Below are positions 1 through 39,656 of a stretch of 64,000 nucleotides of DNA, one piece after another. The stretch is from Macrostomum hystrix (lineage: Eukaryota > Animalia > Platyhelminthes): contig CATNEN010000038.1 of NCBI GenBank assembly GCA_950097015.1, positions 8,618,001 through 8,682,000 on the forward strand, read 5' to 3'. The notes under the pieces were generated by a model. The model worked only from the letters and a program-made list of their open reading frames with translations. It ran no database searches and was not told where the DNA came from. The number at the start of each line of letters is the position of its first letter. The first letter of the stretch is position 1. A program made the translations under genes and the position numbers.

Positions 1-1579
1 GAGAGCAATAAAAATTGAGGCCGCGGGAGCAGGCTTTATAGTAAGGCCTTTTCTCTCGACGCCAACCCCGGCTGCCCATGGGTCTGCTCCGCACCTACCC
101 ACTGCTCCCTTCAGTCCGCAGCGCAGGCAGAACAGCCTCCTACCCCAGTGTACTTGAATGTGCAGTTCTATTCTGTCTCTCTATTCAGCCAGCTGAATCG
201 CCTTTTTCATCTCCTTCCCACCAGTCCGGGAATTTTCCATGATGCTAAATTTAGCGCTGGGTTTTTTCCTAAGCAGTGTGTTGCAATTCTGTTAGGCGCT
301 GGTTCTGCATCTCCGCTGCATTGGAGCCCCACTAGCGCTCACTAAATTTACAGTTCAGAGTAGCATTTGGGTGCATAAAAACTGGTGCTTGTCTCGGGAG
401 TCCTATTGTAGCTAGGGTATGTTCTCGCATTATTTATTAGGTTAGGTAAAGCAAAGTGGCATGCAATTTCGTTTCTGGTTTCTTCTTTATGCCTCACTTT
501 GGAGTGCGCCTACCTATATGTTTCATTGCTTATTTGCAACTCTATTTGTTTTCGGCTTAAGTTTATACGAAAAACGAGTAGCTTGTAATAAGCATGGCTT
601 TGTTGTTCATTGCGCCTATTGTTTTTAAGATCTCTGCACTTGATAACAAGGCACAGAGGGGGCAGGTAGGTCACGGGCCAAGAGCCGGCCTACAAAAATG
701 ATAAAAACCGGAGCATACCGGTTTCTGATGGGACCATCTTCAGCGTGAAGCATCTTTTTTACGGACTTAAAACTGGCCTTCTTGTGGCCCTATCAGTCTG
801 ATCTCTGAAAACTGCTATTAGAAAAAAATTATTTGACTCTACAGCAGGTTTAGTTAGGCCAAGTCAGATTTCACTTGACTTGACCCATGCAAAACAAATT
901 CAGTTCCAAGAACCAGCCGGTTCACGCACCACTGTATTTCAGAGCTGGCAGTTCTCGCAGCTCTTTTACTGAATTTTCGCACTTGAAACTTGTCTTTGCT
1001 GGTCACTTTAAGTCCAGAAGGTTCTGCAATTCATGCAGTGACGCGTGCAGGCGAGTGACCTAATTTCGGCTGTTAATTAAAGTACACGTTGGCACGGCGG
1101 CTTAGTAACTTCTGCGTCTAACCTCTAAATACTTTTGCAGGTATTCCAGAGGCAGCAGGGAAATTTGAGATCATTTGAAGGTGAAAACTTCCCCGAAACG
1201 ATGGATCTCGATTTGGGGATTTGAATAATTCATTCATTCAGCCATGCAATAGCATTCGCATACAAAAAGCAGTGGCAGTAGCTGCAGTGGCCGGTAGAGT
1301 TTGTTTATACGAGCGTACATGTCGATGGTGACTATTATGATCATGAGTTAGATTGTATATTTGCGACTGCTCATAGCAAAACTGAACAAAAAGAGACTGA
1401 AGAAGCAGATTGCTGACAAAAATATCCGACACCGTGAAGGTTGTCCATGCAGCTCTATGTACACTCATTTTAAGCATTGCTACACATTTGAAGTACGCTA
1501 CTATTGTCAGTAGGCCATGCAGCACACACTGACGAAATATTGTAATCGAGGCAAATCAGATCGAATTTTATGACCTTAG

Positions 1580-7544: not shown

Positions 7545-7938
7545 ACTGGGGGTGAGTGGCAGAGATGTTCCTGAGCTGGATTCCACAGCGAGGCCACATA
7601 TTTTAGGGAATTGTTATAAAATGAGTGCAAGCACTGGGTTGAGTGGCAGAGATGTTCCTGAGCTGGATTCCACAGCGAGGCCACATATTTTGGGAGAGAA
7701 GGCTTGGAGGTTTGTCGTGTAATTTACACCTGTGGGAGCAAACCTCCAAGGCTGACAGTGACAGTGTACACTGCCTGACGATGAGAAAGTCAGGCCAGAT
7801 GTACACCCCCGTGTGAGCGAGTGCCTGCGAACGGTATCTGTGTGCGTGTGTGCTCAGGAGTCAGCGCAATGGGCAGAATTGCCTCCTCGCTGACTTGCAT
7901 TGCCCGCAGCCCATTTGCAATTATTATCATTATTATAG
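7545..7938 (+). mobile_element. tRNA-derived SINE family A copy; 5' part lies within an 88-bp tandem duplication (7519-7693)
   Basis: Homologous to 23757-24130: GAGAAGGCTTGG, TGTACACTGCCTGAC hairpin, CTCAGGAGTCAGC tail, (TAT)-rich end. Confidence 0.75.
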
Positions 7939-13694: not shown

Positions 13695-14000
13695 TTGGAG
13701 CAGATTGGCAGAGCTGTATTAACACATTTGCCTCTCGCACCAAGGTCCCTCAGCTCGTATCGTTTACGCACTTGAGGGGCATAAACCCTCTATGCCACAG
13801 TGAGAGTGTACACTGCCTGACGATGCGAAAATCAAGGCAGATGTACTACACTGTGTGAGTATGAATGTGTAACTACCTACAGCCTTGTGTGCTCAGGAGT
13901 CAGCAGGATGAGCAGAATTGCCTCCTCGTTGCGGGTCTACGGTCGCCATGCAAATGATGTGCCATCGGCCCAGAGCCCACCAGCAAGCATTAATTATTAA
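13695..14000 (+). mobile_element. tRNA-derived SINE family A copy (internally deleted)
   Basis: TGGCAGAG, TTGCCTCTCGCACC, GTGTACACTGCCTGAC and CTCAGGAGTCAGC...TGCCTCCTCG blocks match 23757-24130. Confidence 0.75.
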
Positions 14001-14569: not shown

Positions 14570-16294
14570 ATGCAGTACGAAGAGCTGTTAACACACATTT
14601 CCAAGTCCGGTACCTGCTATCGATGGACTGTCACGAACCTGATAACGGTACTTTCGATGAAGGCAGCCTTTGACATGTTCATCCTGAACCTCGTCACTGC
14701 CAGTGTGCCGTTCCACTGCTCGGAGGTCTCTGTGAACAATGAGACTCTGTCATGGACTCAGGTAGCTGCCAACGTCAGCATTGCAGACAACTTCAACATC
14801 ACCAGCTTCACCTGCACTCGACCCAGACTCGTGTGGGACTCCGACGGTGCGCTGCGACTTGCCTCGACTGAGACTAACTCTTCTGCACTCAACCAAAGCC
14901 TGTCTGGTGAAACCTGTCGCTCGTGGACGTTCATGCCGGATCCGCCAACACGCTGGACGATGTTCATGGAGTACTCGATGGTGTGCGACCGTCAATACCT
15001 GATGAATCGAATTCAGACGCTGCTGCAGCTGGGAATCTGTCTGTCTCTCATCTTCGGCCCCCTGGGCGACGTCATTGGTCGCAAGCCCATGTTGGTCGGC
15101 TTCGCCTACCTTGACATTGCGTGCAACATTGCCGTCATCTTCGTGCAGGACCTCACAGCACAGATGGTGCTTCGATTCTTGATGGGATTCGGCGCACCGG
15201 CAGTGCTGATCGGGATAATACTAATCACAGAACTAGTATCGGAGGACTACCGAGGGATCCATGGCAACCTGGTTTGGGTTCTGTTCAGCGTTGGTTACAG
15301 CGGATCTGCAGGAATCAGCTACTTCATTCACAACTGGAGAGTGCAGACGGCGGTCTCCTGTCTGATAACAGGCATTTGCTACGCAACTTACATTCCTTTG
15401 ATTCCGGAGTCTCCGCGTTGGCTGCTCACCCGCGGAAACACGAAAAGAGCCAGGCGGACATTGAAACAAATCGCTAAACTCTCTGGCTGCAAAGACGTGC
15501 TGAATAACTTCGATTTTGAACACAATGAGGTCGTGCAACAGCGTCAAGATTCGGATGAGGCAACGAAGAAGTGTTGCATTTTTACTCGTAACATATTGCC
15601 CCAGGAGAACCTGTGTCGCTTCTCCTACTTTGTCACTCTCGGCGTTGTTTCGTTTAACTTTTTTACAGTTTCGCTTACGTATTTTGCTCTAGCGTTTAAA
15701 CGTGACTTCATAGCAAGCAACATCTATTTGAACGTGTTCATATCTGGACTGATTGAGCTGCCGGCCTACATGCTTGCCCTGCTGCTGTCAATCAGGGCTG
15801 GTCGCAAGTACACCAGTCTGGCCAGCATGACCTTCTGTGGCATTGGACTGATAATTCTACCGTTCATCCCTAATAATCCTGGCATTGTGATTCAGGTCAG
15901 CAGTGTCCTGGCAATGGCTATTAAATTCTGCGTCACTGTTGCGTTTAGCATACTGACTGTCTTTGGCTCGGAAGTCCTGCCAACCAAGGTTCGAAGCTGC
16001 TCCTTCTTTGTCGCTTCGATGCTGATGCGCAGTGCACAGCTGCTTGCGCCTGAGCTCGGTGGAGCCCTTGCTAGCTTCCATGACAACCTTCCGCCGCTGC
16101 TTTACGGTGTGCTTTCCATAGTGGCCAGTCTGTTTATTTTGCTGCTTCCGGAGACCAAGGACAAAGGGATGCCGAACACAGTGGCCGAGATGGAACCAGT
16201 AGGCTGCCCGTGTTTTCAAACAACTTCAGTAGCTGCCAACGGAGGTCCCACCATTCAGATTGATGCCGAGGAGTTAAGGCCGCTTAACGGATAA
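14570..16294 (+). CDS. SLC22-family transporter, paralog 4 (intronless, 574 aa)
   Basis: Same motifs; complete ORF; AATAAA at 16471-16476. Confidence 0.93.
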   Translation: MQYEELLTHISKSGTCYRWTVTNLITVLSMKAAFDMFILNLVTASVPFHCSEVSVNNETLSWTQVAANVSIADNFNITSFTCTRPRLVWDSDGALRLASTETNSSALNQSLSGETCRSWTFMPDPPTRWTMFMEYSMVCDRQYLMNRIQTLLQLGICLSLIFGPLGDVIGRKPMLVGFAYLDIACNIAVIFVQDLTAQMVLRFLMGFGAPAVLIGIILITELVSEDYRGIHGNLVWVLFSVGYSGSAGISYFIHNWRVQTAVSCLITGICYATYIPLIPESPRWLLTRGNTKRARRTLKQIAKLSGCKDVLNNFDFEHNEVVQQRQDSDEATKKCCIFTRNILPQENLCRFSYFVTLGVVSFNFFTVSLTYFALAFKRDFIASNIYLNVFISGLIELPAYMLALLLSIRAGRKYTSLASMTFCGIGLIILPFIPNNPGIVIQVSSVLAMAIKFCVTVAFSILTVFGSEVLPTKVRSCSFFVASMLMRSAQLLAPELGGALASFHDNLPPLLYGVLSIVASLFILLLPETKDKGMPNTVAEMEPVGCPCFQTTSVAANGGPTIQIDAEELRPLNG

Positions 16295-16666
16295 GAACCA
16301 ATGCTGGTACTGAATTCAATTTGTACTAAATTTATCACATTTTTTAGCTCTTTGGAATGGAAACTAATTATTTACTTATGGTGTCCTATTGATTTTTGAT
16401 AAGAGTAATATGCATGCTTATTGTTCCCCTTAACACAAAATAATTGGAAGCCCACTACGGCTAAAAATATAATAAATTATTGTAAGTAACTTGTCGGATT
16501 CAACAGCATATGCACTTTATATTTGCAACATGACCAAAATGAGTAACTTGACTTACTTTGACTTAGCGGCAGGGGGCCTCCATGACGGACGCAGCGAGGA
16601 GGCGGCTGTTGCCGCCCATATCGCTAACCCCTGGCAGCCAGACGGCCTCCAGCGAGGCGGTGCCGC

Positions 16667-19600
16667 TCAGGGTGGTCCGTCGGTCGGTTCCGCCGCGCGA
16701 TCTTCCTCGCCATAGGCTGGGAAGAAATCAGCTCGGCCGGTATCCCGGAGGAAGTGGGCGAGCTGAGGGATGTTCTCGGGCGAGCAGGCTTCGGCAAGAG
16801 TCGGTGCCGGCCCGAGGTGTTTTAGCCTAGCCCGGGTGAAGGCCGGGCAGTGGCAAATGAAATGCTCGGCGTTTTCACGGCCGGAGCAGCAGAAAGGACA
16901 CGTTTCCTCAGGCACGTGGCCTTGGAGGTAGCGGTGTCTGGTGAAGCAGCCATGTCCCGAAAGGGCCATGGTGACTGCTCTCAGGTCTCTGCGGTTTAGC
17001 CTGAGTAAGGCCTTACGCAGGTTACTAGAGGGGGTTGGCACCGCAGCCCTGGACTGGCGACAGTTCAGGGTGCTGGACCACCTCCTCCGGTGCTGGGTCT
17101 CCATCCAGTGGTTGATGCTGGAGTTGACAACGGAGGCGGGGATCGGGGATTCCGGGCCCGGGCCCATCAGGGAGCCGGCTGCTCCAGCCTTTGCAAGCTC
17201 GTCCGCCATCTCATTCCCTGTGAGCCCGGCGTGCCCAGGGATCCACATCAGCTCCACCTTGTTAGACTGCGCCAAACCGTTTAACTGGGTGTTGCAGTCC
17301 AAGGTGGTTCTGGAGCGAGAGGTGCAGCGACTGAGGGCCTTGAGGGCTGCTTGACTGTCGGAGTGAAAAAAGATCCTCCGACCAGCCAGCTGCCTCTGGC
17401 GCAGCTCAGCCGCACAGAAACTGATGGCGAGCATTTCGTTTTGGAAAACGCTTGAGCTCTTGCCACAGTGTTGGGAGTGGGTCCAGAGGACCTCGCCACC
17501 CGAGGCGACGCACACCCCGAATCCCGATTTACCGTTCATCAGGGAGCCGTCAGTGTAACAGTGGACTGCGGGGTCATCCCAGCAGTCCTTTACCTCATTA
17601 CGAGGGAAGATGCTGACTTTGTACCTGTGGCTCCGGAGTAAAGTGGCCGGGGCCCCGTCCGAAAGGATGGTGAGCCCTCCGCACTCGCCCAGAGTTTTCA
17701 GGCAGAGGTCAGAGTGGGGCAGAAGGGAGCGCTTCGAGAAGGCTCGCGAATTCTGGAAGGATACACCCGCATCAAGGAGACGACGGGTGGACTTTGCCGC
17801 TTCCCCCTTAACAAAAATGTCAATGGGTGTAGCGTTGAGGAAAGCGTTCATGCCTTCAAAGGGAGTGGAGGGTGGGGCGCCCAGCGTCATGCGACAGGCT
17901 CTGCCCTGCACCCTATAAAGCGCCTCCAGGTTTTTCTGGATGCTCATGGCACTGGCCCAGATGAGGCCAGCGTAAGCGACTGACGGTCTAATGATCGCCG
18001 TGTAAATCCACCAAAGGTTTTTGGGGGTTAGCCCCCAAGTGGTGCCCACGGCTCGCCTGACTTGCGCCAGAATGGCCAGGGCCCTCTTGGCCTTTGTGGT
18101 AATGTGCGGGGTCCAGTTAAGCCTATGGTCTAGCAGGATACCAAGGCACCGGACCTGCTTTTCCATGGCAATATTCTTGCCATAGAGAGTCAGAGGCTCA
18201 ATGGTCCAGCGCAGCCTGCTGGTAAACATAACCGCAACGGTCTTGGACTCAGAGAGTCGGAGCCCGCATTGGTCCGCCCAGCGCACCGCCCTGTTGATAA
18301 AGCCCTGAATGAGGTCCCTGGTGGTTTCCGCCGAGGGGCCCGCGCAGATGGCGGTCACATCGTCGGCATATCCCACCTTCAGGACTGGGTCAGGCCGAGT
18401 GCTTTTTAGCAGCTCATCCATGACGAGATTCCACAGCAGTGGGGTGAGGACGCCACCTTGGGGCCCTCCTTTTAGGACAGGTGCCGAGAGCACCCTGCCT
18501 TCGAGGTGGGCCACCACGTGGCGATTCCGGATCATGTACATGACCCAACGGACGAGGTGGGGGTGAGTGGCCCTGGAAACCAGGGCCTTCTCAAAGGCTT
18601 CGAAAATAACGTTATCGAAGGCCCCCTCAATATCAAGGAAAACAGCCAGGGCAAAACCGCTGCCCAGCACTGCCTTCTCGAGAGTCTCCACAATGCAGTG
18701 GAGGGCGCTCTCCGTGGACCGGCCCGCCCGAAAGGCGTGCTGGTTTGGTGAGAGCGGGGCCCGCCCTAGCTCTACAGTAAGAAGGCGCCAGAGCACCAGT
18801 CTTTCCATGAGCTTGAGGCAGGTGGAAGTCAAGCTTATCGGGCGATAAGACTTGACCGAGCGATAGTCGCCTTTGGCGGGCTTCGGGATGAAGACGACCC
18901 GGGCTTCATGCCACCGCGCTGGTACGTAGCCCAGCACGATGCAGGCCCGTAGAAGTCTGCAGAGGAGATGGAGGAAGCGGCCATTTTTAACCGCTTCATG
19001 CAGAAAGGCCGGATATATACCATCTGGCCCAGGTGCTTTAAAAGGATTGAATGACTTAGCCGCGCGAACGATGCGGTCATTCGTAACGAGTGACTGAGCC
19101 AGGCCCTGACCTCCACGCGAGTGGTCGTCTGGGCCGAAGTGCGCCGGTACACTCGGGAAGAAATGCCCTAGCATAAGCTCGAGCGTTTCCTCCGGGCGCT
19201 CAGTGATCGAGCCGTCCGGCTTTTTAATCGATGAGAGCTTGGAGAAGCGGTCGTTGGTGAGCGCCTTTACCACGCGGGCCGTGGGCCGCGAGCCCTCAAG
19301 CCCTTCGCAGTATTGTCGCCACTTGTCCGCTTTTGCCCTTCTGACCCGGCCCTTAAACTCATGGATGGCGCGAGTATAGGCCTCTTTGTCATCAGGGTCG
19401 TGCGAGGTTTTCAGCTTCCTCTGGAGAGCCTTAGCTCGGCGTCTTAGGACTCCGAGCTCGGGGTTCCACCAGGGGGCCGATTTTTTGCCTTTGTAGGCTT
19501 TGAGCGGGCAAGCCATTTCGTAGGCCTCTGTGATGGCGCCGCCCAGCAGGGCAGCCACTCCATCCAGGTCCTGCGTGGTTTCCATGGCCATGGAGGGGTC

Positions 19601-20371
19601 AGAATCCCGAAGGCCCTCATGCAGCTTTTGGCTGAACGCGGGCCAGTCGGTATTTCTGACATTACGCCTCCAAATAGGCTTTTGCTTCTTATCGGGGGTG
19701 CCGATGTTGAAACGGATGAAACGGTGGTCCGAGAGCGAGCTTTCGGTCTCCCACACCTCCCACCCCAGCACCCTTGGGAGGATGCCGGGTGAGGCCAGGG
19801 TGACGTCAAGCACCTCAGCCCACCGCCCATTGTCGAAAGTGGGCGTGTTGCCCACATTGCAGAAGTTTAGAGGCGTGCCGCTGACGAAGGCCAGGAGCTC
19901 TTCGCCGCGGTCATTGATTTTTGAGCTACCCCAGTGGGTGTGATGCGAGTTTACATCTCCCGCGAGGAGCAGCTCGAAGTTTCGTGCCCTGGCGAATTCA
20001 CAGAGGGCGACGAGGGTATCGCTAACCACGGGGGCGTCGCCTGCCAGGTAGGCGGATGCCACGAGGGTCAACTTGTTAGGCACAATGTGTGCAGATTGGA
20101 TGACGCAGATGTCCCCGTTAGAGAGATCGGGTCTCATCCACGCATTTAAGGCTTTTGCGGCATAGATCAGTGATCTAGGGCGGACAGAGTCTGCCATGCA
20201 GAAGCAGTCATAGCCAGCAGGAATGTTGCTTGGCTTGTTCTTTGATAGCCAGGGCTCCTGCACAAGTACAAGGCCCGGCATCATGCGCTCTGTCGTGCGC
20301 ATCAGATTGACTGATGCTGCCACGCAGTGCTGGGTGTTAACTTGCAGACATAATATTCCGGGGATCATCAT
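16667..20371 (-). CDS. LINE ORF2: AP endonuclease - reverse transcriptase - RNase H - C-terminal Cys/His knuckle (1234 aa)
   Basis: APE: LQVN, VQEPW, GDVNSHH..WGS, SDH. RT: [31 protein letters not shown]. RNase H: YTDGS, DSQAAL, WIPGH..GNE.AD. Knuckle: CPFC..E..EHFICHC. Confidence 0.97.
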
Positions 20372-20383
20372 GCAGGCAGAGGT

Positions 20384-21931
20384 CTACTTGGAGGGGGACC
20401 CAGCCAGAAGGCGGTCCTCCTCCTCCGGGTCGATGTCGGTAGCCATGGGCTCCTCCGTGCCCAGGCCCCGAGCCGGAGACGGGAACTCGACGGCGTCAGC
20501 CGCCCAGTCCCCGCCCCCGGCCCCGAGCCCAGGCCCAGAGTCGCCCTCAACTGGAGCCGACACCGCTCCCTGGGCCGTGGGAGGGGCGCTCGAAGGGCCC
20601 TGCTCGATGGAGCTGGGCACCTCTGAGGCCTCCCCCGTAGCCCTTGGTTGCGGCGCCTGCCCCGGTGGGCCACCGCGCATCTCAGCGCGCAGCTGGGCCA
20701 TCTTGGCGGTTCGCACCACCTCGGAGGCCCGCTGGAGAAGGCCCCGGCGCTTTGTGACACGCGCGGGGCGACGCTCAGAGCTGCCAGCGATGGCACGCTC
20801 TGGCCTTTTTTGGCGGGACGACTGGGCCCTGCCCCCAGTCCCAGCCTTGGGGTCCGAGGACCCTTCATTGGCCGGTACGGTGGTGGGCCCGGTCTGACCT
20901 CGGGTTTTATCCGCCTCGAAGGCGAAGATTTTGGTCTTCCACAGACCAATGCAAATGTTGGCGCCATCTGGGTAGCGGCGTGTCCATTGCTCGGACAGGC
21001 CCAGAATGGCGGTGAAACCGGTGCCGTCGGGGCGCAGGATCGTGCGGTGCACGATCAGGCCCGCTGTCGGCAGCTCCCGGTTCATCGCGATGAGGCCCCT
21101 GCGGAGGTCCTCAGCGCTGGTGACGACACTTTTCGCCGGGACGAAGATACGGTGTTGCTTGGTCTTTGGTGGCTCGTTCTCCCGTAGGAACTCGAGGCCA
21201 GCCGCCCAGCTCTGCGTGGGCAGCAACTCGAGGAGCCGCCGCCCCGATTCCGCATCGCCGGGCCAGACGACGAAGCACGATTCCCTGGTAGCGCTTGCGC
21301 CGACCGCCAGGGGCTCGCCCTTCAGTTGAAGTTGCCACAACATAGCATCTATGTTGCGGCAAATGTCGCTGAGCTGTTCGCTGCTCAGCCTTTTCCCGTC
21401 TCTGCCGGTGATGATGACGGCAGGTTGCCTACGTGCGATGGCGGCGTAGGTAGCTTGTGGTCCCGGGCCCTGTCCGGTGGCGTCCCCACCCTCGGGATCT
21501 GCGTCGGCGGTGGGCACAGGGCCCTCCGCCTCCGCTTCTCCTTCGGGCCGGGCAGCCGTCCGGATGGGCGCCGGGCCCTCCTTGGCCCGCGACCCTGGCC
21601 TCGGGGCGTCGTGGGCTCCGCCCCGTGCAGGAGCCTGGGCAGGAGGCACAAGGCCCCCCGCCCCAGCCCCCGCCCTAGGCAGAGCCCCTTCGGCCCCTCT
21701 GGCCTGGGCCTGGTCCTTGGTCAATGGAGCCGACGTGCCGTGGGCCAGCATGCGCCTACGGCGTTTTGCCGCTCCAGAGGTGGTGGAGCGCTTAGCGCCC
21801 CGGTCATCGCGCGAGTTGGGCAGCGCGGCATTTGTGGCGGTCGCGGGGCCAGCTAGCCCGGGCGCCGCAGCGTGTATGGCCTCAGGCACCATGGTGTCCT
21901 CGGCCGGAGCAGTTGAAGGGCTAGAAGCCAT
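20384..21931 (-). CDS. LINE ORF1 (gag-like; resembles DUF4780-type ORF1 of LOA-clade elements)
   Basis: Long ORF ending 12 nt before the ORF2 ATG. TYAAIA..PAVII..GKRLSSEQL segment with basic/disordered flanks. First ATG at 21931 (the track starts at TTG 21943). Confidence 0.85.
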   Translation of the reverse strand: MASSPSTAPAEDTMVPEAIHAAAPGLAGPATATNAALPNSRDDRGAKRSTTSGAAKRRRRMLAHGTSAPLTKDQAQARGAEGALPRAGAGAGGLVPPAQAPARGGAHDAPRPGSRAKEGPAPIRTAARPEGEAEAEGPVPTADADPEGGDATGQGPGPQATYAAIARRQPAVIITGRDGKRLSSEQLSDICRNIDAMLWQLQLKGEPLAVGASATRESCFVVWPGDAESGRRLLELLPTQSWAAGLEFLRENEPPKTKQHRIFVPAKSVVTSAEDLRRGLIAMNRELPTAGLIVHRTILRPDGTGFTAILGLSEQWTRRYPDGANICIGLWKTKIFAFEADKTRGQTGPTTVPANEGSSDPKAGTGGRAQSSRQKRPERAIAGSSERRPARVTKRRGLLQRASEVVRTAKMAQLRAEMRGGPPGQAPQPRATGEASEVPSSIEQGPSSAPPTAQGAVSAPVEGDSGPGLGAGGGDWAADAVEFPSPARGLGTEEPMATDIDPEEEDRLLAGSPSK

Positions 21932-22371
21932 TGAAAGCTGCAATGAAGAGAGGGGCTTCCTGTAGACACAGGCAGGAATAACCCGCTCAGCCGCGATCCC
22001 AAAACTGAGCGGGGGCAGCCAAAAAAGACAAGTTACAACCCGGGGTGGGATGCCAGGACCACCGGGAGGAACCGTAAGAGACCAGACTACTCCCTGGCCA
22101 AGCGTCCATCAGCACGGTCAACACTGGGACATTGGAGGGTGCCATTGAGCCGGCGCCGAGGCCTGCGGGCTGGCCGCAAACCCTGTTAAGGTCAAAGGGT
22201 GACACCTGTCCCTCAGGGCCGTAGCCAGAGGTACCTGATCACGCACAGGTGCACGAAAATTGCGGACAAGCCACATACCCTGTTAAGGTCAAAGGGTGAC
22301 ACCTTTCCCTCCAGCCGGGGCTAGAGGTACCCAGTTTGGCCGGAGGCCCTGGATGGGTCATCCAGCGCTGT

Positions 22372-22600
22372 TGCCCATTCTGTCCGGCTGCCCTAGGGTC
22401 AGCCTTGAACACTCGCGGGACGTGTACCCATGGGTCAGCTGACGGGACAGCGTTGGAGGGATTCCTGCACCCGAAGGTACAGGTCTCCTTCCTGCCAGGC
22501 CTGCTCAAAAAACGGCTGCAGGTGTGAGGCATCGCAGACCAAAGCCCGTGGGCCTGGACTGACTCATACCTCACAGGCACTGTGTCCCGCCGGTGCGAGC
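22372..22600 (-). ncRNA. HDV-like self-cleaving ribozyme at the LINE 5' end
   Basis: P1 GCUCGC/GCGAGU, P2 CCCAU/AUGGG, P3 GGG/CCC, L3 UACACGU, P1.1 AC/GU, P4 GGCUG..CAGCC, J4/2 C-A-G-A. G1 abuts the TSD. Confidence 0.85.
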
Positions 22601-22857
22601 AAAATGAGTAAGGAACATTTCATTTCAAGTTTCATTTCTCAACACGGAGTTTACTGATCGTAAATCAGAGAAACTGCCGACTTGAATTCTTCTTGAACAA
22701 AAAATAGAAAGTTCAGTTGTAAAACTGGCCACCACATATGCGACTCCACCTGTACTACTGTCGCTGATGTAGTGACACTTGCTGCGCAAATTCTTGGAAC
22801 CTTGGTCCCGTATGCAGTCAGCGCTGTACTTCATTTTTGCTTTTACGCCCATAACAA

Positions 22858-23756: not shown

Positions 23757-24130
23757 GGGGTCGGTGGCAGAGTGGTATGCATGCTTGCCTCTCGCACCAC
23801 GGTCCCTAAGTTTGATTCCGCAACGAGGTCATATTCATTTGTGGCGCAGCCGCGGAGAGAAGGCTTGGGGGCTTGTCGTGCAATTTACGCCATTGAGTGC
23901 CAACCTTCAAGGCACAGTAAGAGTGTACACTGCCTGGTGATGAGAAAGTCAGAGCAGATGTACACAATAGTGTACACAATAGTGTGAGCGTGTGCCTGCG
24001 TACGGTATCTGTGTGCGTGTGTTCTCAGGAGTCAGCGAAATGAGCAGAATAACCCCCTCGGTTGCAGGTCTAGTGTCACCAAATTATGCATCATTTCCCG
24101 CAGCTTTCCTGCAAGTTGTATAATTATTAA
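23757..24130 (+). mobile_element. tRNA-derived SINE family A, most complete copy
   Basis: GGGG start, Pol III A box TGGCAGAGTGG 23765-23775, B-box-like GTTTGATTCC 23810-23819, central hairpin, LINE-like structured tail, TAATTATTA end. Several homologous copies in the window. Confidence 0.82.
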
Positions 24131-28779: not shown

Positions 28780-31186
28780 ATGACCACTACAGCCCCTGTG
28801 GCAGCAGCTTCAACTGCTGGCCTCGCAGCATCTTCAGGCAGGTCAGCTACCGAAGAAGCCCTGCTCATCACCTGCTACTCAGCAGCAGTTTTTCTTAGCA
28901 CGATTGGCAACCTCACAGTCATTGTTGTGGTCTCTCGCGGCCGTCAATGCCACACGGACCTCCGAGGCTTCTTGCTCAGCCTGGCCGTTGCTGACTTGCT
29001 CATCGGCTGCTTCTGCCTGCCGTTCACCCTCGTCAACGTGCTGCACAGAGCTTGGCCTCTGCCAGACATCCTGTGCAAGCTGGTGTCCTACTGCCAGCTG
29101 GTGGCCGTCACATCCTCGGTGCTGACTAACATGGCCATCGGCTTCGACCGATTCTGGGTGGTGGCCTTTCCTCTGAATCAACGCCTGACCTTCAATCGGT
29201 CGCGGGTGGTGATTTTGGCTCTGTGGGCCGCCTCACTGCTGGTGTCATCGGTGCAGCTCAGAGTCAGCGGAAAGTACGCCACGCTTGGCCCTGTAGGACG
29301 TCCTGGCAACGTCAACGAGAGTGTGCCGCTTTCGCCCACGATAACAATGGAAATGTGCCGCGAGCACTGGAACAACCCGAGCATTCAGCGGGCCTACTCA
29401 ATCTTCGTCCTGGTGCTCACCTACCTTCTGCCGGTGTCGGTGCTGTGCGCCACCTACGCAGCGATCGGGCGCAAGCTTTGGACTCGAACCATGCCAGGAA
29501 ACGCGAACCCGGCCAGGGATCAGCAGCACGTCAGGGCGAAGCGCAAGGTGGAAAATCAAGTCTTTTTGTTCCTTTATTTCAAAGTATAGCACGAATTATA
29601 CTAAATTACCATTGAAGCTGTCTACGTATAGTGCAGAGTTACGACTACCAGAATAAAGTAGGCTCCATCGCCTTCACTTGCACTGCTCCTGGGAGTCCTT
29701 GTGGTTGAGCTCAGACTCGGAGTAGTTGGGAGCCCGAGCTGGTGATTCTCGGTTGCTTCTTAGAAATTCTCTGCACTGGTGATTAATCACACAAGCCGAA
29801 ATTGTCAAAGTAAAGCTGAGCGAAATAAAAAAATCCTGTCCCCCAAACTCTGGAGACAGCTAATAAGCTGGGGCACTAGTCTCGCATCGGTTGGATTGAT
29901 CAGCGCACTAATAAAAATGTCTGTCTAGCAGCAAACAACGCTTGAAGCGTCGACAGTTAATCCTTATGAATCCCCGAGGAAGCCGCAATCTCAGGCAGCT
30001 GCTCGATTCTTCTGCACGCCTCTCTTCGCCTCTATCCGACTGGAGCTGAGCAGGATGAGCACCAACCCCCTGCATACGCTCGTAGCGTCTTGTTAGCGAT
30101 CTAGCCCCATCGGGACAGAATGCAAGAAGTTTAGCTGAGGGCTAAAATTAAGAAGACACTAATTTTGACACGCTGAAACGTCGGTGCGAAGACAAGACGG
30201 TTGAAGCAATAATCGGTAATTCTATCGAGCAATGCTTAAGGTCCATAAATTCAGAAAAATATTTGGTCCATGCCCGTCAAGGTGTGATGCAAGCTAATAG
30301 TAGATTAGTCTATTTCTCAGTGCTAATGCGTCTGACTATTGCACGAAGGTATCTGAGTGCGAATATGCGAGAAGACTTCGTGGCTTGTCGTGAAATTTGC
30401 GCCCATAAGTGCTACCCCTCAATTTGTGGAAGTACATTGTGTATGCACTGTCTGTCGACGATGTAAAAACCTGTGCATGTGTGCTCAGGAGTCAGTGAAA
30501 TGGGCAGAATTTCCTCGTCGCTGGCTTGCAGGTCTAGTGTCACCAAATGATGTGCCATGGCCAAAAATTTCATATCGAGGCAATGGCCTTTAGGCACTCG
30601 TCGGCCATTGCATAGAATTAATTGCCCTGTAGCAATGGGGTTTTTGGAAATTTTAACCAATGATGCTCATTGGAATTCAGAGTTTAAGGCAATGGCCTGA
30701 TTGGCTCGTGTCAAAGGCCATTGCCTTAAACTATGACTTCCGATGAACCCCCATAGCCCGCAGCCCTCCTGCAATTATTTATATTTTTGTTTGAGTAGGT
30801 GTGTGTGCTCAGGGGGCCATCGGAATGAGCTGAATTGCCTCGGCGCTGGCTGCTTCCTGCTGATGAATGCGAAATAAATCTTGGCTTCCTGCACCGAGTC
30901 ACTCTTTAGCTCTTCGCGACGAACGCTATAATTAGAAAGATGTAATTATATCAGCAATAAAAATGGCACCTTAGCTTGTGCTTTAACTGTCTGTATCGTC
31001 CGTAGTATGTGTACATGTTGGTACACTTAAGCAGTCAGCGTGAACAACAGCTTGGGGTTGTCAGTCAGCGAGTGTTGTAGCAACTTAAGTACACGTGGCA
31101 CATTGTGTTGACCTCCGCGCTGCTCCCGTTGGCTGCTCTCCCGAGCAAGTTTGACATGCATAATTGACAAGCCCGGCCTTGAAAAC

Positions 31187-33042: not shown

Positions 33043-33669
33043 TCGTGTTTCTCGTGAAATGCTAGCAGCTTAAACTTATCAATTTTGTTGATGGTGGAAA
33101 TAGTTTTAAAATAATTCTGCCGTTAAAGAAGTAAAATTTCTTTCACGCTGTATCTTAGAATAAACACGAAGCAATGCACCCAATACTATACTTACCAGCT
33201 AGACACGCGGGAATGTCTAGAACAAGATTCAAATACTTCAGTGTGTATAGCCGTATGTATGTCTATACAAACAAAGTTGAAACTAAAAATATGGATAACA
33301 TGACAAGTCTGTCTTGTTTAGTCTCTGAATAATTCAGCTTTTAAGCAAACTGTCGTTTATCAATATCACTCATTTATCTCACATTTACAAAAAGTTGCCT
33401 ACTTATCCTCTTGCCAACTTGATGTTACCTTGCAATGGTCCGAAGCAATATTATTAAATAGAGGTCTTTGAGCTTGAGAAACTTGAAGTCTGGCTAATTA
33501 ATTGCGTCATGATTTCCCCGGGTGAATTAAGTCGACGCTGTTGATTACGCAACAGAGACAGAACAGTTGAAAGAATTCGACGACATTTAAGACTGAACTG
33601 TCATTGGTTAATGATTGCTTATGGTTAATCATAGCTCCACTTCAATACTTCACTGTACTTCACTGCAAT

Positions 33670-34828
33670 TTAGTGAGCCACTGCTGTGTACTTCAGTGAG
33701 CCACTGCTGTGTACTTCAGTTAGTGAGCCACTGCTGTACTTCAGTGAGCCACTGATTTGCATTGTACATCAGTTAGTGAGCCACTGCTGTGTACTTCAGT
33801 GAGCCACTGCTATGTACATCAGTGAGCCACTGCTGTGTACTTCAGTGAGCCACTGCTGTGTACTTCAGTGAGCCACTGCTATGTACATCAGTAAGTGAGC
33901 CACTGCTGTGTACATCAGTGAGCCACTGCTGTGTACTTCAGTGAGCCACTGCTGTGTACTTCAGTGAGCCACTGCTGTGTACTTCAGTGAGCCACTGCTG
34001 TGTACTTCAGTGAGCCACTGCTGTGTACTTCAGTGAGCCACTGCTATGTACTTCAGTGAGCCACTGCTGTGTACTTCAGTGAGCCACTGCTGTGTACTTC
34101 AGTGAGCCACTGCTGTGTACTTCAGTGAGCCACTGCTGTGTACTTCAGTGAGCCACTGCTGTGTACTTCAGTGAGCCACTGCTGTGTACTTCAGTGAGCC
34201 ACTGCTATGTACATCAGTAAGTGAGCCACTGCTGTGTACATCAGTGAGCCACTGCTGTGTACTTCAGTGAGCCACTGCTGTGTACTTCAGTGAGCCACTG
34301 CTATGTACTTCAGTGAGCCACTGCTGTGTACTTCAGTGAGCCACTGCTGTGTACTTCAGTGAGCCACTGCTGTGTACTTCAGTGAGCCACTGCTATGTAC
34401 ATCAGTAAGTGAGCCACTGCTGTGTACATCAGTGAGCCACTGCTGTGTACTTCAGTGAGCCACTGCTGTGTACTTCAGTGAGCCACTGCTATGTACTTCA
34501 GTGAGCCACTGCTGTGTACTTCAGTGAGCCACTGCTGTGTACTTCAGTGAGCCACTGCTGTGTACTTCAGTGAGCCACTGCTGTGTACTTCAGTGAGCCA
34601 CTGCTGTGTACATCAGTGAGCCACTGCTGTGTACTTCAGTGAGCCACTGCTATGTACTTCAGTGAGCCACTGCTGTGTACTTCAGTGAGCCACTGCTGTG
34701 TACTTCAGTGAGCCACTGCTGTGTACTTCAGTGAGCCACTGCTGTGTACTTCAGTGAGCCACTGCTATGTACATCAGTGAGCCACTGCTGTGTACTTCAG
34801 TGAGCCACTGCTATGTACTTCAGAGTGA
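33670..34828. repeat. 23-bp minisatellite (CAGTGAGCCACTGCTGTGTACTT)n, ~50 units, each with a CAGTG-AGC-CACTG micro-hairpin
   Basis: Direct periodicity. Confidence 0.97.
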
Positions 34829-38559: not shown

Positions 38560-39656
38560 CGGACTGGGTTGAAACAATTCATTTACTTGAAGGCTTCAGA
38601 CGCCATCAGCTTGGCTCTGTTGTACAATGCCGACAGTTGGTCCCATTTTCTCATTCTTTTCTGTGTTCCTGATTGTCCGCAGTGACTTCCTGTTGGCTGA
38701 TGTTCTGTCAGTGGTTTAAAATGATAATATATTTGGTTTAAAGGGCCGATTGGCATAAGCGAAACTTGCGTTTGCTGAAAATTTCCTTGAATTCATTCGG
38801 ATAGCTGTTGAATCGATGCAGAAGTTCAGTTTTTATAGTTATGTAATTTGTGTTTTATACGAGCTATTATTCTCTATGGAAAGTATTCTAAATGTACATT
38901 GTAAGTCTGCCCAATGTACATTTAATTTGAGAGGCTCATCTAGTCTTTACTTAGTACTCTTTTTAGGTCGCAGCAGTTGATTATAAACCTGTCTATCTAG
39001 TACGAATGACAATAGGCAAACCTAAACTTATAAATGGCCTTCACTTTGCTTGTAGTTGTGCCTTTCGCAGCTTCTTACTAGTACAGGTGCATGAAATGGA
39101 ATGGTTGGTCTCCATTTTGTGAGTATAGTTACTTGCTGTATTCTTAAGCACTCTTATGGCGCGAAGGTGGCGTGACCATCTCGAGCGGTGAAAAGCCTTG
39201 GAAATTGTGCATTGCTATTTAGTCACCCCAGAAGCGTGTACATGTGCTGACAGCTTCGTGACTAGCTTAATTGCTGATCGAATGTCGAATATCGCCAACT
39301 GATGAGTCAGTGACCACTTAAACAAGTGTACAGTACATGCGCGAGAGACAGGCGCACTACCGTTTCAGAATTTGACTTGACTTAGCTGCAGGGAACATTG
39401 TCCAGATGCTGCGCGGAGGCTGCACGTTATTCACTCAATATCTGATTGGCCCCGTTCTTAAACTGAAAAAGTGATCGGAAAAAAGTGGATCAAAGCTTGG
39501 GCGAGCGTTTAAAACAGACATTTCTCGGAATTCGTACACTGTCTTCAGATTTCATAACTTAAAAGCGTATAAACTAGCTTGGATATTTACATAAAATGCG
39601 TCACTGTATGTGTCTGCTTTATTGCCAAGAGCACATGTACATAGTTTGATGCGCGT

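What the first reader, a model, noticed from the sequence alone, without database searches (positions are those of the whole stretch)
16569..16633. LINE 3' UTR and the local tRNA-SINE tail share a covarying three-way-junction RNA: candidate new SINE/LINE partner system
Seen: the LINE 3' UTR (minus) reads CAGGGG-TTAGCGA-TAT-G-GGCGGC-AACA-GCCGCC-TCC-TCGCTG-[TCC GTCAT GGA hairpin]-CCCCTG, then the tail. SINE-A tails (starting 7855, 13894, 24026, 30486) give a consensus CAGGAG-TCAGCGA-AAT-G-GGCA-GAAT-TGCC-TCC-TCGCTG-[TTGCRGGTC..GCCCGCAG hairpin]-CTCCTG, then a (TAT/TAA) tail. The closing stem covaries (CAGGGG/CCCCTG vs CAGGAG/CTCCTG), so does the inner stem (GGCG/CGCC vs GGCA/TGCC), and the asymmetric internal loop is kept. 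Established: stringent-type SINEs borrow the 3' stem-loop of a partner LINE for RT recognition. Inference: SINE-A is mobilised by this LOA-like family or a relative. The terminal repeats differ, so the true partner may be a sister family. I am not aware of a LOA-clade SINE partner described in this lineage.
Basis: partly seen in the sequence, partly recalled or inferred. Interest (0 to 1): 0.82.

Follow-up and report, generated by a model that had tools for sequence, protein, structure and literature searches.

The report
SINE tail copies LINE RNA junction
A very abundant short jumping element in this flatworm genome ends in the same folded three-armed RNA module as the 3' end of a young, intact long jumping element (LINE). 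The short element therefore most likely borrows the copying enzyme of that LINE group, which is a known kind of parasitism seen here in a new animal lineage, but the exact LINE that drives it is not settled.

Summary
The intact LINE in the window (16547-22599, minus strand; APE+RT+RNase H) has a 64-nt three-way junction (16570-16633) just before a fixed (TAAGTCAAG)x2 end.

**What supports a shared module**
- The similarity is beyond chance: local alignment score 37, against 17.3±2.3 for shuffles (0 of 2000 reached it).
- A covariance model built only from three LINE tails finds every SINE-A tail it searched, at E from 2e-7 to 1e-2.
- 96% of pair cells form standard pairs, against 37-57% in slid controls, and each of the four helices has one double (compensatory) change.
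- Both families are young, and their target-site duplications are similar (SINE-A mode 13 bp; LINE 12-14 bp).

**What stays open**
- The second hairpin and the terminal repeat differ: the SINE ends in (TTA)n, the LINEs in TAAGTCAAG repeats.
- No hybrid tails exist in the genome.
- No LINE with a SINE-type tail was found, but that search was limited.

**Unverified labels and novelty**
- "LOA-like" could not be tested.
- tRNA finders do not recognise the SINE head as a tRNA.
- SINE/LINE pairs with RNase H-bearing clades (I, Tad1, Vingi) are already known, so this is a new member of a known kind.
- First readers of this scan noted the same idea on at least 7 other windows.

The parts
16547..22599 (-). 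Full-length young LINE ('LINE1', 6,053 bp) flanked by a 12-bp target-site duplication, TTACTCATTTTG, at 16535-16546 and 22600-22611
   Evidence: ORFs. Pfam finds APE, RT and RNase H in ORF2. Target-site duplication. At least 40 genomic 3' ends are about 100% identical, out of 532 candidates. Copies are 99.6-99.9% identical over up to 2 kb.
20384..21943 (-). ORF1 (519 aa) with no Pfam domain and no CCHC knuckle
16667..20371 (-). ORF2 (1234 aa): APE endonuclease, reverse transcriptase, RNase H and a C-terminal CCHC-like motif
   Evidence: The closest relatives are Macrostomum lignano proteins and unnamed assembly contigs at 54-73% identity.
16570..16633 (-). Three-way-junction RNA module in the LINE 3' UTR: closing stem CAGGGG/CCCCTG, stem TAGCGA/TCGCTG, hairpin GGCGGC-AACA-GCCGCC, and a small hairpin TCC-GTCAT-GGA
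16547..16569 (-). Linker CCGC plus the terminal repeat TAAGTCAA(A)G x2. The terminus is the same, apart from small variants, in the 30 genomic copies read.
23757..24126 (+). Full-length but old SINE-A copy (84% identical to the young consensus). Its junction starts at 24026 and it ends in a (TTA)-type tail.
7654..7938 (+). Old SINE-A copy with a rearranged 5' end; its junction spans 7855-7938
   Evidence: The LINE-only model hits it at E = 0.006-0.01.
13706..13999 (+). Old SINE-A copy (75-81% identical); its junction starts at 13894
30369..30785 (+). Old SINE-A copy interrupted by about 190 bp; its junction starts at 30486 and the tail end lies at 30752-30785
39375..39454 (-). Short fragment ending in ...CCCTGCAGC TAAGTCAAG. 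This is the LINE2-type end, so it is probably a heavily 5'-truncated LINE copy.
   Evidence: weak model hit at E = 0.13

Best explanation
The roughly 64-nt three-way junction at the end of the LINE 3' UTR is most likely the cis-acting element that the LINE's own reverse transcriptase complex recognises before target-primed reverse transcription. It is kept, with compensatory base changes, in at least three LINE families of this flatworm genome.

SINE-A is a roughly 350-bp element with pol III A-box and B-box motifs and roughly 8,000-14,000 copies. That number is extrapolated from its density in the window and in the flanks of the fetched loci. SINE-A carries a homologous copy of the junction at its 3' end. 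It is therefore most likely copied in trans by a LINE of this group, the 'stringent' type of SINE/LINE partnership.

Shown: the homology, the common fold, the covariation, the youth of both families and the similar target-site duplication lengths.

Inferred: that the junction is what the enzyme binds, and that the abundant young LINE1 family, rather than a sister family, is the present driver. I put about 0.35-0.4 on LINE1 itself. The SINE has kept the junction but carries its own second hairpin and its own (UUA)n end, on which priming probably uses 1-3 nt of microhomology with TA-starting target sites.
For: Sequence and fold:
- The alignment score is 37 against shuffles at 17.3±2.3 (0 of 2000), and the match lies at the 3' end of both elements.
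- The junction is the minimum-free-energy fold of the LINE1, LINE1b and SINE-A cores.
- A covariance model built only from LINE1, LINE1b and LINE2 tails finds all SINE-A tails searched, over the full model length, at E from 2e-7 to 1e-2. It finds the Element-B mini-insertion at 2e-4. The nearest other hits have E > 0.1.
- 96.4% of pair cells are paired, against 37-57% when partners are slid.
- There is one double change in each helix: G-C/A-U in the closing stem, A-U/G-C in stem 2 (in both LINE2 and Element-B), G-C/A-U in hairpin 1, and C-G/G-C at the base of hairpin 2.

Other support:
- The junction is conserved in LINE2, whose ORF2 is only 56-60% identical.
- Both families are young. SINE-A copies are 0-0.9% from the consensus and LINE1 copies are 99.6-99.9% identical.
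- Target-site duplications are similar: SINE-A mode 13 bp; LINE1 12, 12-13, 13-14 and 27 bp.
- No other multi-copy element was found with the SINE-type junction in a non-SINE context.
- There is precedent for SINEs that share 3' ends with I-clade, Tad1 and Vingi LINEs (PMC3747384, Table 1). That review's reference list also cites a paper titled 'changing tails' on the mosquito SINE Gecko.
Against: - The terminal repeats differ completely: (TTA)n against TAAGTCAAG x2. No hybrids exist, meaning zero SINE junctions with the LINE terminus and zero LINE1 junctions with (TTA)n.
- The second hairpin is 41 nt in the SINE and 11-15 nt in the LINEs, with no sequence similarity.
- Identity in the shared 40 nt is only about 80%, much lower than in classic pairs whose tails are nearly identical over about 100 nt (PMC3747384).
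- The covariation rests on about five independent source sequences, on an alignment fitted to the model.
- In its longer context the LINE closing stem competes with another pairing.
- The minimum-free-energy folds of LINE2 and Element-B are not the junction.
- There is no binding or mobilisation data.
Confidence: 0.62

Rival explanations
1. SINE-A is driven by a different LINE family that ends in (TTA)n and was not sampled here, or is now rare or extinct. Its likeness to LINE1 only reflects common descent of 3' UTRs within the LINE group. LINE1 itself does not move SINE-A.
For: - Tail type and junction type are strictly coupled, with no hybrids.
- All three LINE families seen share the TAAGTCAAG terminus, so the terminus looks important to them.
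- Element-B shows that SINE-type tails with other hairpin sequences existed.
- My exclusion searches miss a LINE that shares more than 7 nt upstream of the junction with the SINE. The follow-up at the -12 boundary gave 136 hits that I could not read.
Against: - Searches for the SINE-type junction or SINE-type end in a non-SINE context found only SINE deletion variants and the four identical Element-B copies. No recurrent LINE-like context appeared.
- In about 330 kb of sampled genome, all SINE-type tails sit on SINE-A bodies.
- SINE-A is active now (copies 0% diverged), so its driver should be active and multi-copy.
Confidence: 0.3
2. The shared junction is real but serves something other than reverse transcriptase recognition, for example RNA stability, 3' end formation or localisation. 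Sharing it would then say little about which enzyme copies the SINE.
For: No binding data exist. The LINE's conserved terminus, which the SINE lacks, could be the true recognition site.
Against: - The module sits at the very 3' end in both elements, where target-primed reverse transcription starts.
- Short insertions consisting of only the junction plus tail (Element-B) show that this piece alone can be retroposed. The search design did, however, select for that 5' start point.
Confidence: 0.06
3. The resemblance is chance or convergence between two GC-rich hairpin-forming sequences.
For: The shared stretch is short (about 40 nt), and the blastn-short search with the LINE tail as query (E up to 0.01) returned no SINE tail.
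Against: - 0 of 2000 shuffles reach the alignment score.
- The LINE-only model hits every SINE tail searched and almost nothing else.
- The internal-loop and junction sequences, the order of the arms and the position at the 3' end are all the same.
Confidence: 0.02

Closest known systems
Stringent-type SINE/LINE pairs that share a 3' tail (for example tortoise Pol III SINE/CR1, salmonid SINEs/RSg-1 or SalL2, and the eel LINE UnaL2 with its SINE partner, the last from my own knowledge), as reviewed in PMC3747384
   Same: A non-autonomous element with a pol III promoter carries at its 3' end a structured element homologous to the 3' UTR of a LINE in the same genome. Both families are active, and both make target-site duplications of like size.
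   Different: In classic pairs the tails are nearly identical over about 100 nt and both end in the same short repeat. Here only a roughly 40-nt part of a three-way junction is alike (about 80%), one arm is replaced, and the terminal repeats differ.
Gecko SINE with I-clade LINEs (MosquI, I-74_AAe) in Aedes aegypti (PMC3747384, Table 1; Tu et al. 2004 is cited there, but I could not read it)
   Same: The partner belongs to a LINE group that carries RNase H, the host is a protostome, and the SINE 3' repeats vary ('changing tails', by the paper's title).
   Different: The host phylum and the LINE family differ. I could not compare sequences or structures.
Tad1-clade and Vingi pairs (Mg-SINE/MgL, SINE2-1_BG/Tad1-24_BG, SINE2-1_Acar/Vingi-2_Acar; PMC3747384, Table 1)
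   Same: These are further examples of SINEs that share tails with non-CR1, non-RTE LINE clades.
   Different: They come from fungi and a lizard. No three-way junction is described for them in the review I read.
LOA clade of non-LTR retrotransposons
   Same: The domain order APE-RT-RNase H, two ORFs and a C-terminal CCHC-like motif in ORF2 fit the broad I/LOA/R1/Tad group.
   Different: Clade membership needs an RT phylogeny with reference elements, which I could not build. ORF1 shows no known domain.

Membership tests
SINE/LINE partnership of the stringent (shared 3' tail) type | Significant sequence similarity between the SINE 3' end and the LINE 3' UTR of the same genome | tested here: met
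   Alignment score 37 against shuffles 17.3±2.3, 0 of 2000. The LINE-only covariance model finds SINE tails at E down to 2e-7.
SINE/LINE partnership of the stringent (shared 3' tail) type | A common RNA secondary structure supported by compensatory changes | tested here: met
   96.4% of cells paired against 37-57% in slid controls. 4 of 21 pairs have double changes, one in each helix. The junction is the minimum-free-energy fold for 3 of 5 cores. The independent sequences are few.
SINE/LINE partnership of the stringent (shared 3' tail) type | The same terminal repeat in the SINE and the LINE | tested here: not met
   The SINE ends in (TTA)n and the LINEs in TAAGTCAAG x2. There are zero hybrid tails in the genome.
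SINE/LINE partnership of the stringent (shared 3' tail) type | Trans-mobilisation of the SINE by the LINE protein | not testable with these tools
   This needs a retrotransposition or binding assay.
SINE/LINE partnership of the stringent (shared 3' tail) type | Overlapping periods of activity and like insertion signatures | tested here: met
   SINE-A copies are 0-0.9% from the consensus and LINE1 copies are 99.6-99.9% identical. Target-site duplications are 13 bp (mode) in the SINE and 12-14 bp in the LINE (n = 4, one of 27 bp).
tRNA-derived SINE | A head recognisable as a tRNA, with pol III A and B boxes | tested here: inconclusive
   By eye, the head has an A-box-like motif (TGGCAGAGCGG) and a B-box-like motif (AGTTCGATTCC). 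ARAGORN finds no tRNA in the window or in four young copies, and Rfam finds nothing at E <= 1.
LOA clade LINE | Placement inside the LOA clade in an RT phylogeny with reference elements | not testable with these tools
   No named reference LINE sequences are on hand, and hits carry no clade names.
LOA clade LINE | APE + RT + RNase H domain order with two ORFs | tested here: met
   Pfam finds Exo_endo_phos, RVT_1 and RNase_H in that order. This order is shared with the I, R1, Tad1 and Ingi groups, so it does not discriminate.

The most novel reading that the evidence does not exclude
Recognition by this LINE's enzyme is modular. On this reading the three-way junction alone is enough for capture in trans, and reverse transcription can start on any short tandem repeat that follows it. 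That would explain how a SINE with (UUA)n instead of the LINE's conserved TAAGTCAAG terminus reached roughly ten thousand copies, using TA-starting target sites by microhomology. It would be a natural experiment that separates the 'binding' and 'priming' parts of a stringent LINE 3' end.
Probability: 0.3. Interest if true: 0.55.

Novelty: new member of a known kind. Interest (0 to 1): 0.4.

Why it matters
It gives a first concrete LINE/SINE pair for Macrostomum flatworms, whose repeats are uncharacterised (PMC10468722 leaves them for later work). Both partners look active today, in a species kept as inbred laboratory lines.

The module is small (64 nt) and well-defined. It has natural variants in LINE1, LINE1b, LINE2, SINE-A and the mini-insertions, which makes it a convenient system for asking which parts of a LINE 3' end are needed for recognition and which for priming.

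It also matters for annotation. The SINE makes up roughly 1-2% of the genome, and other notes of this scan report copies that act as introns.

Tried and rejected
**Looking for a LINE with the SINE-type tail**
- I used patterns that demand the SINE junction with a non-SINE upstream 7-mer (78 hits, 30 read).
- I also demanded the SINE end with a non-SINE hairpin arm (27 hits).
- Both gave only SINE deletion variants, 5'-truncated copies and four identical 'Element-B' copies. Element-B lies about 1.5-2.7 kb from a MULE-transposase-like ORF.
- One candidate with LINE-like upstream bases (L092) proved to be a fragment.
- A repeat of the trick 12 nt further upstream gave 136 hits that could no longer be read.

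**Other searches**
- A search with the Element-B tail found only its four copies and hits at about 85% identity.
- Hybrid-tail searches found none.
- A generic junction pattern gave 14 hits that I could not read. Through my own gap error it also missed LINE2.

**Blank or uninformative results**
- Rfam finds nothing in the window at gathering thresholds.
- The metagenome scan for the LINE terminus found many contigs, but none has the junction.
- A loose regular-expression scan was useless.
- The LINE1-then-SINE-tail junction in L036 could be an insertion or a template switch. Its 5' side is outside the locus.

**Contigs left out**
- L134, from a human-gut metagenome, was left out of the analyses.

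Full report
**What is in the window**

On the minus strand lies an intact non-LTR retrotransposon, which I call LINE1. ORF1 spans 20384-21943 (519 aa, no Pfam domain). ORF2 spans 16667-20371 (1234 aa) and carries endonuclease (Exo_endo_phos), reverse transcriptase (RVT_1) and RNase H domains. It also has a C-terminal CCHC-like motif.

A 12-bp target-site duplication, TTACTCATTTTG, flanks the element, which fixes it at 16547-22599. The 3' UTR runs from 16666 to 16547.

In the window's genome at least 40 copies have 3' ends about 100% identical, out of 532 first-look candidates. All 30 copies read end in (TAAGTCAAG)x2, or a variant differing by a base or two, followed by unrelated flank. Copies are 99.6-99.9% identical over up to 2 kb. 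This is a very young family.

**The SINE**

A search with the window's full-length copy (23757-24126) gave 4,397 first-look candidates. Thirty copies align almost without differences. They give a consensus of about 350 bp plus (TTA)n, and their median divergence from the consensus is 0.86%, with several at 0%.

The head has A-box-like and B-box-like motifs by eye. However, ARAGORN and Rfam do not recognise a tRNA in it. The label 'tRNA-derived' therefore remains a motif-level statement.

The 3' part of the consensus reads as follows:
- closing strand CAGGAG
- stem strand TCAGCGA
- loop AATG
- hairpin GGCA-GAAT-TGCC
- TCC
- stem strand TCGCTG
- a 7-bp stem CTGCGGG/CCCGCAG around 27 nt
- CC
- closing strand CTCCTG
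- CAA
- (TTA)n

From the density of extra copies in the window and in locus flanks, I estimate roughly 8,000-14,000 copies. This is an extrapolation.

**Is the resemblance real?**

- The local alignment of the LINE1 3' UTR to the SINE consensus scores 37. Dinucleotide shuffles give 17.3±2.3, with a maximum of 31 and 0 of 2000 reaching the observed score. The match lies at the 3' end of both elements.
- The isolated cores of LINE1, LINE1b and SINE-A fold into the same three-way junction as their minimum-free-energy structure, with z = -3.7, -2.6 and -6.1.
- In a 131-nt context, the LINE closing stem competes with an alternative pairing, while the two inner helices persist.

**Other LINE families**

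By chance the fetched flanks hold two relatives.
- LINE2 (L005, minus strand) has an ORF2 56-60% identical to LINE1's. Its junction reads CAGGG(A), CTAGCGG, a shorter first hairpin, TTC, CCGCTG, TCCC-loop-GGGA and CCCTG. It is followed by CAGC and TAAGTCAAG-T-TAAGTCAAG.
- LINE1b (L086) has an ORF1 85-89% identical to LINE1's. It differs in the first hairpin's loop and in the innermost closing pair.

The junction plus the TAAGTCAAG terminus is therefore a feature of a LINE group, not of one family.

Four identical copies of a mini-insertion (Element-B; L070, L088) consist of only a SINE-type junction and a (TTA)n tail. They carry a G-C pair where SINE-A has A-U in stem 2, and changes in the long hairpin. 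They lie about 1.5-2.7 kb from a MULE-transposase-like ORF.

**An independent test of homology and structure**

I built a covariance model from the three LINE tails alone, with the junction as its structure. In 117 kb it found every SINE-A tail present, aligned over the full model, at E from 2e-7 to 1e-2. It found Element-B at 2e-4. The next hits have E > 0.1.

The exact LINE terminus alone is worth only about 14 bits, as the metagenome contigs show. The SINE scores of 20-38 bits therefore come from the junction.

On the model-based alignment of LINE1, LINE1b, LINE2, three SINE-A copies and Element-B:
- 96.4% of pair cells are standard pairs, against 37-57% when partners are slid by 1-3 columns.
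- 4 of 21 pairs show changes on both sides, one in each helix.

| Helix | One form | Other form |
|---|---|---|
| Closing stem | G-C in LINEs | A-U in SINE |
| Stem 2 | A-U | G-C in LINE2 and Element-B |
| Hairpin 1 | G-C | A-U |
| Base of hairpin 2 | C-G | G-C |

Two caveats apply. There are only about five independent source sequences, and the alignment is fitted to the model.

**Insertion signatures**

SINE-A copies have clear target-site duplications with a mode of 13 bp. These often start with TA or A, so the tail-flank boundary is ambiguous by 1-3 nt. LINE1 duplications are 12 bp (window), 12-13, 13-14 and about 27 bp. This fits one kind of endonuclease but does not discriminate between LINE families.

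**What speaks against LINE1 as the direct driver**

- The terminal repeats differ.
- The genome holds no SINE junction followed by the LINE terminus, and no LINE1 junction followed by (TTA)n.
- The second hairpin is unrelated in sequence and three times longer in the SINE.
- Identity in the shared part is about 80%. In the classic cases the tails are nearly identical over about 100 nt and the terminal repeat is shared (PMC3747384).

I therefore looked for a better LINE.
- Patterns demanding the SINE junction in a non-SINE context (30 loci read), or the SINE end with another hairpin arm, gave only SINE deletion variants, truncated copies and Element-B.
- This excludes a multi-copy LINE with a near-identical junction, unless that LINE also shares the bases just upstream with the SINE.
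The 3' UTRs of the closest ORF2 relatives found (63%, 54%, 44% and 42% identity) could therefore not be examined.

**Mechanism**

My best reading (0.62) is the known stringent mode. The LINE's reverse transcriptase complex binds the junction in its own 3' UTR, and SINE-A RNA, carrying a homologous junction, is copied in trans. I give LINE1 itself about 0.35-0.4 as the present driver, because it is the abundant young family.

The main rival (0.3) is an unsampled sister family with a (TTA)n end.

The Gecko SINE of Aedes, paired with I-clade LINEs, is listed in PMC3747384. The paper cited there speaks in its title of 'changing tails' and slippage. This is a lead that tail differences need not exclude a partnership, but I could not read that paper.

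**Organism and literature**

Earlier AI notes of this scan name the genome as Macrostomum hystrix. I did not verify that directly. It is consistent with the closest named ORF2 relatives being M. lignano proteins.

The M. hystrix genome paper leaves repeats uncharacterised (PMC10468722). A full-text search found no description of a Macrostomum SINE/LINE pair. Repbase, Dfam and SINEBase could not be consulted.

The table of known pairs lists I-clade, Tad1 and Vingi partners, but no LOA partner and no flatworm (PMC3747384).

First readers of this scan noted the same idea on at least seven other windows of this genome, and no follow-up was visible.

**Verdict**

This is a new member of a known kind, with one interesting twist: a shared junction without a shared terminus. 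Interest is about 0.4.

Noticed in passing
It often sits at retroposon-like 3' ends that share a different GC-rich hairpin ending ...GCCAAGGCAT, and some have visible target-site duplications. None has the flatworm junction. Only one (L147) shows weak RT similarity to this LINE's ORF2 (25% over 173 aa). The terminus may be much older or more widespread than the junction.
   Followed up: partly
window 22372-22600: Another first-reader note (s1-851535) proposes an HDV-like ribozyme at the LINE's 5' end. Rfam at gathering thresholds reports nothing in the window. I did not examine it.
   Followed up: no
L036 about 1935-2100: A LINE1 3' end is followed at once by a SINE-A tail that starts 4 nt before its junction (TGCT, then CAGGAG). 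This is either a LINE1 insertion into a SINE copy or a template switch between the two RNAs. The LINE's 5' side lies outside the locus.
   Followed up: partly
L070/L088 with L091 (G000:C1:907872-913900): Four 100% identical copies of a junction-only mini-insertion (Element-B) lie about 1.5-2.7 kb from a 412-aa ORF with weak Mutator/MULE transposase matches (E = 1.6e-4). The insertion may have been multiplied as part of a DNA transposon or a segmental duplication.
   Followed up: partly
window 33650-34800: A long tandem array of a roughly 23-bp unit (CTGCTGTGTACTTCAGTGAGCCA...), seen while scanning with a regular expression.
   Followed up: no
window 14570-16294 (+): An uninterrupted 574-aa ORF for a sugar/MFS transporter (Sugar_tr, E = 1e-25) lies directly next to the LINE's 3' end.
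   Followed up: no
SINE-A consensus, about positions 195-240 (e.g. window 23925-23965): The SINE body holds a long, near-perfect hairpin (GTGTACACTGCC TGAC ... GTCA GGGCAG ATGTACAC) whose loop, GAUGAGAAA, recalls hammerhead core motifs. Rfam finds no ribozyme at E <= 1 in a young copy.
   Followed up: partly
L032 about 800-1114 (-): A fragment of another LINE's C-terminal zinc-knuckle region (40-57% identical to ORF2 residues 1134-1183) is followed by a different structured 3' region closed by CATGGGG/CCCCATG.
   Followed up: no
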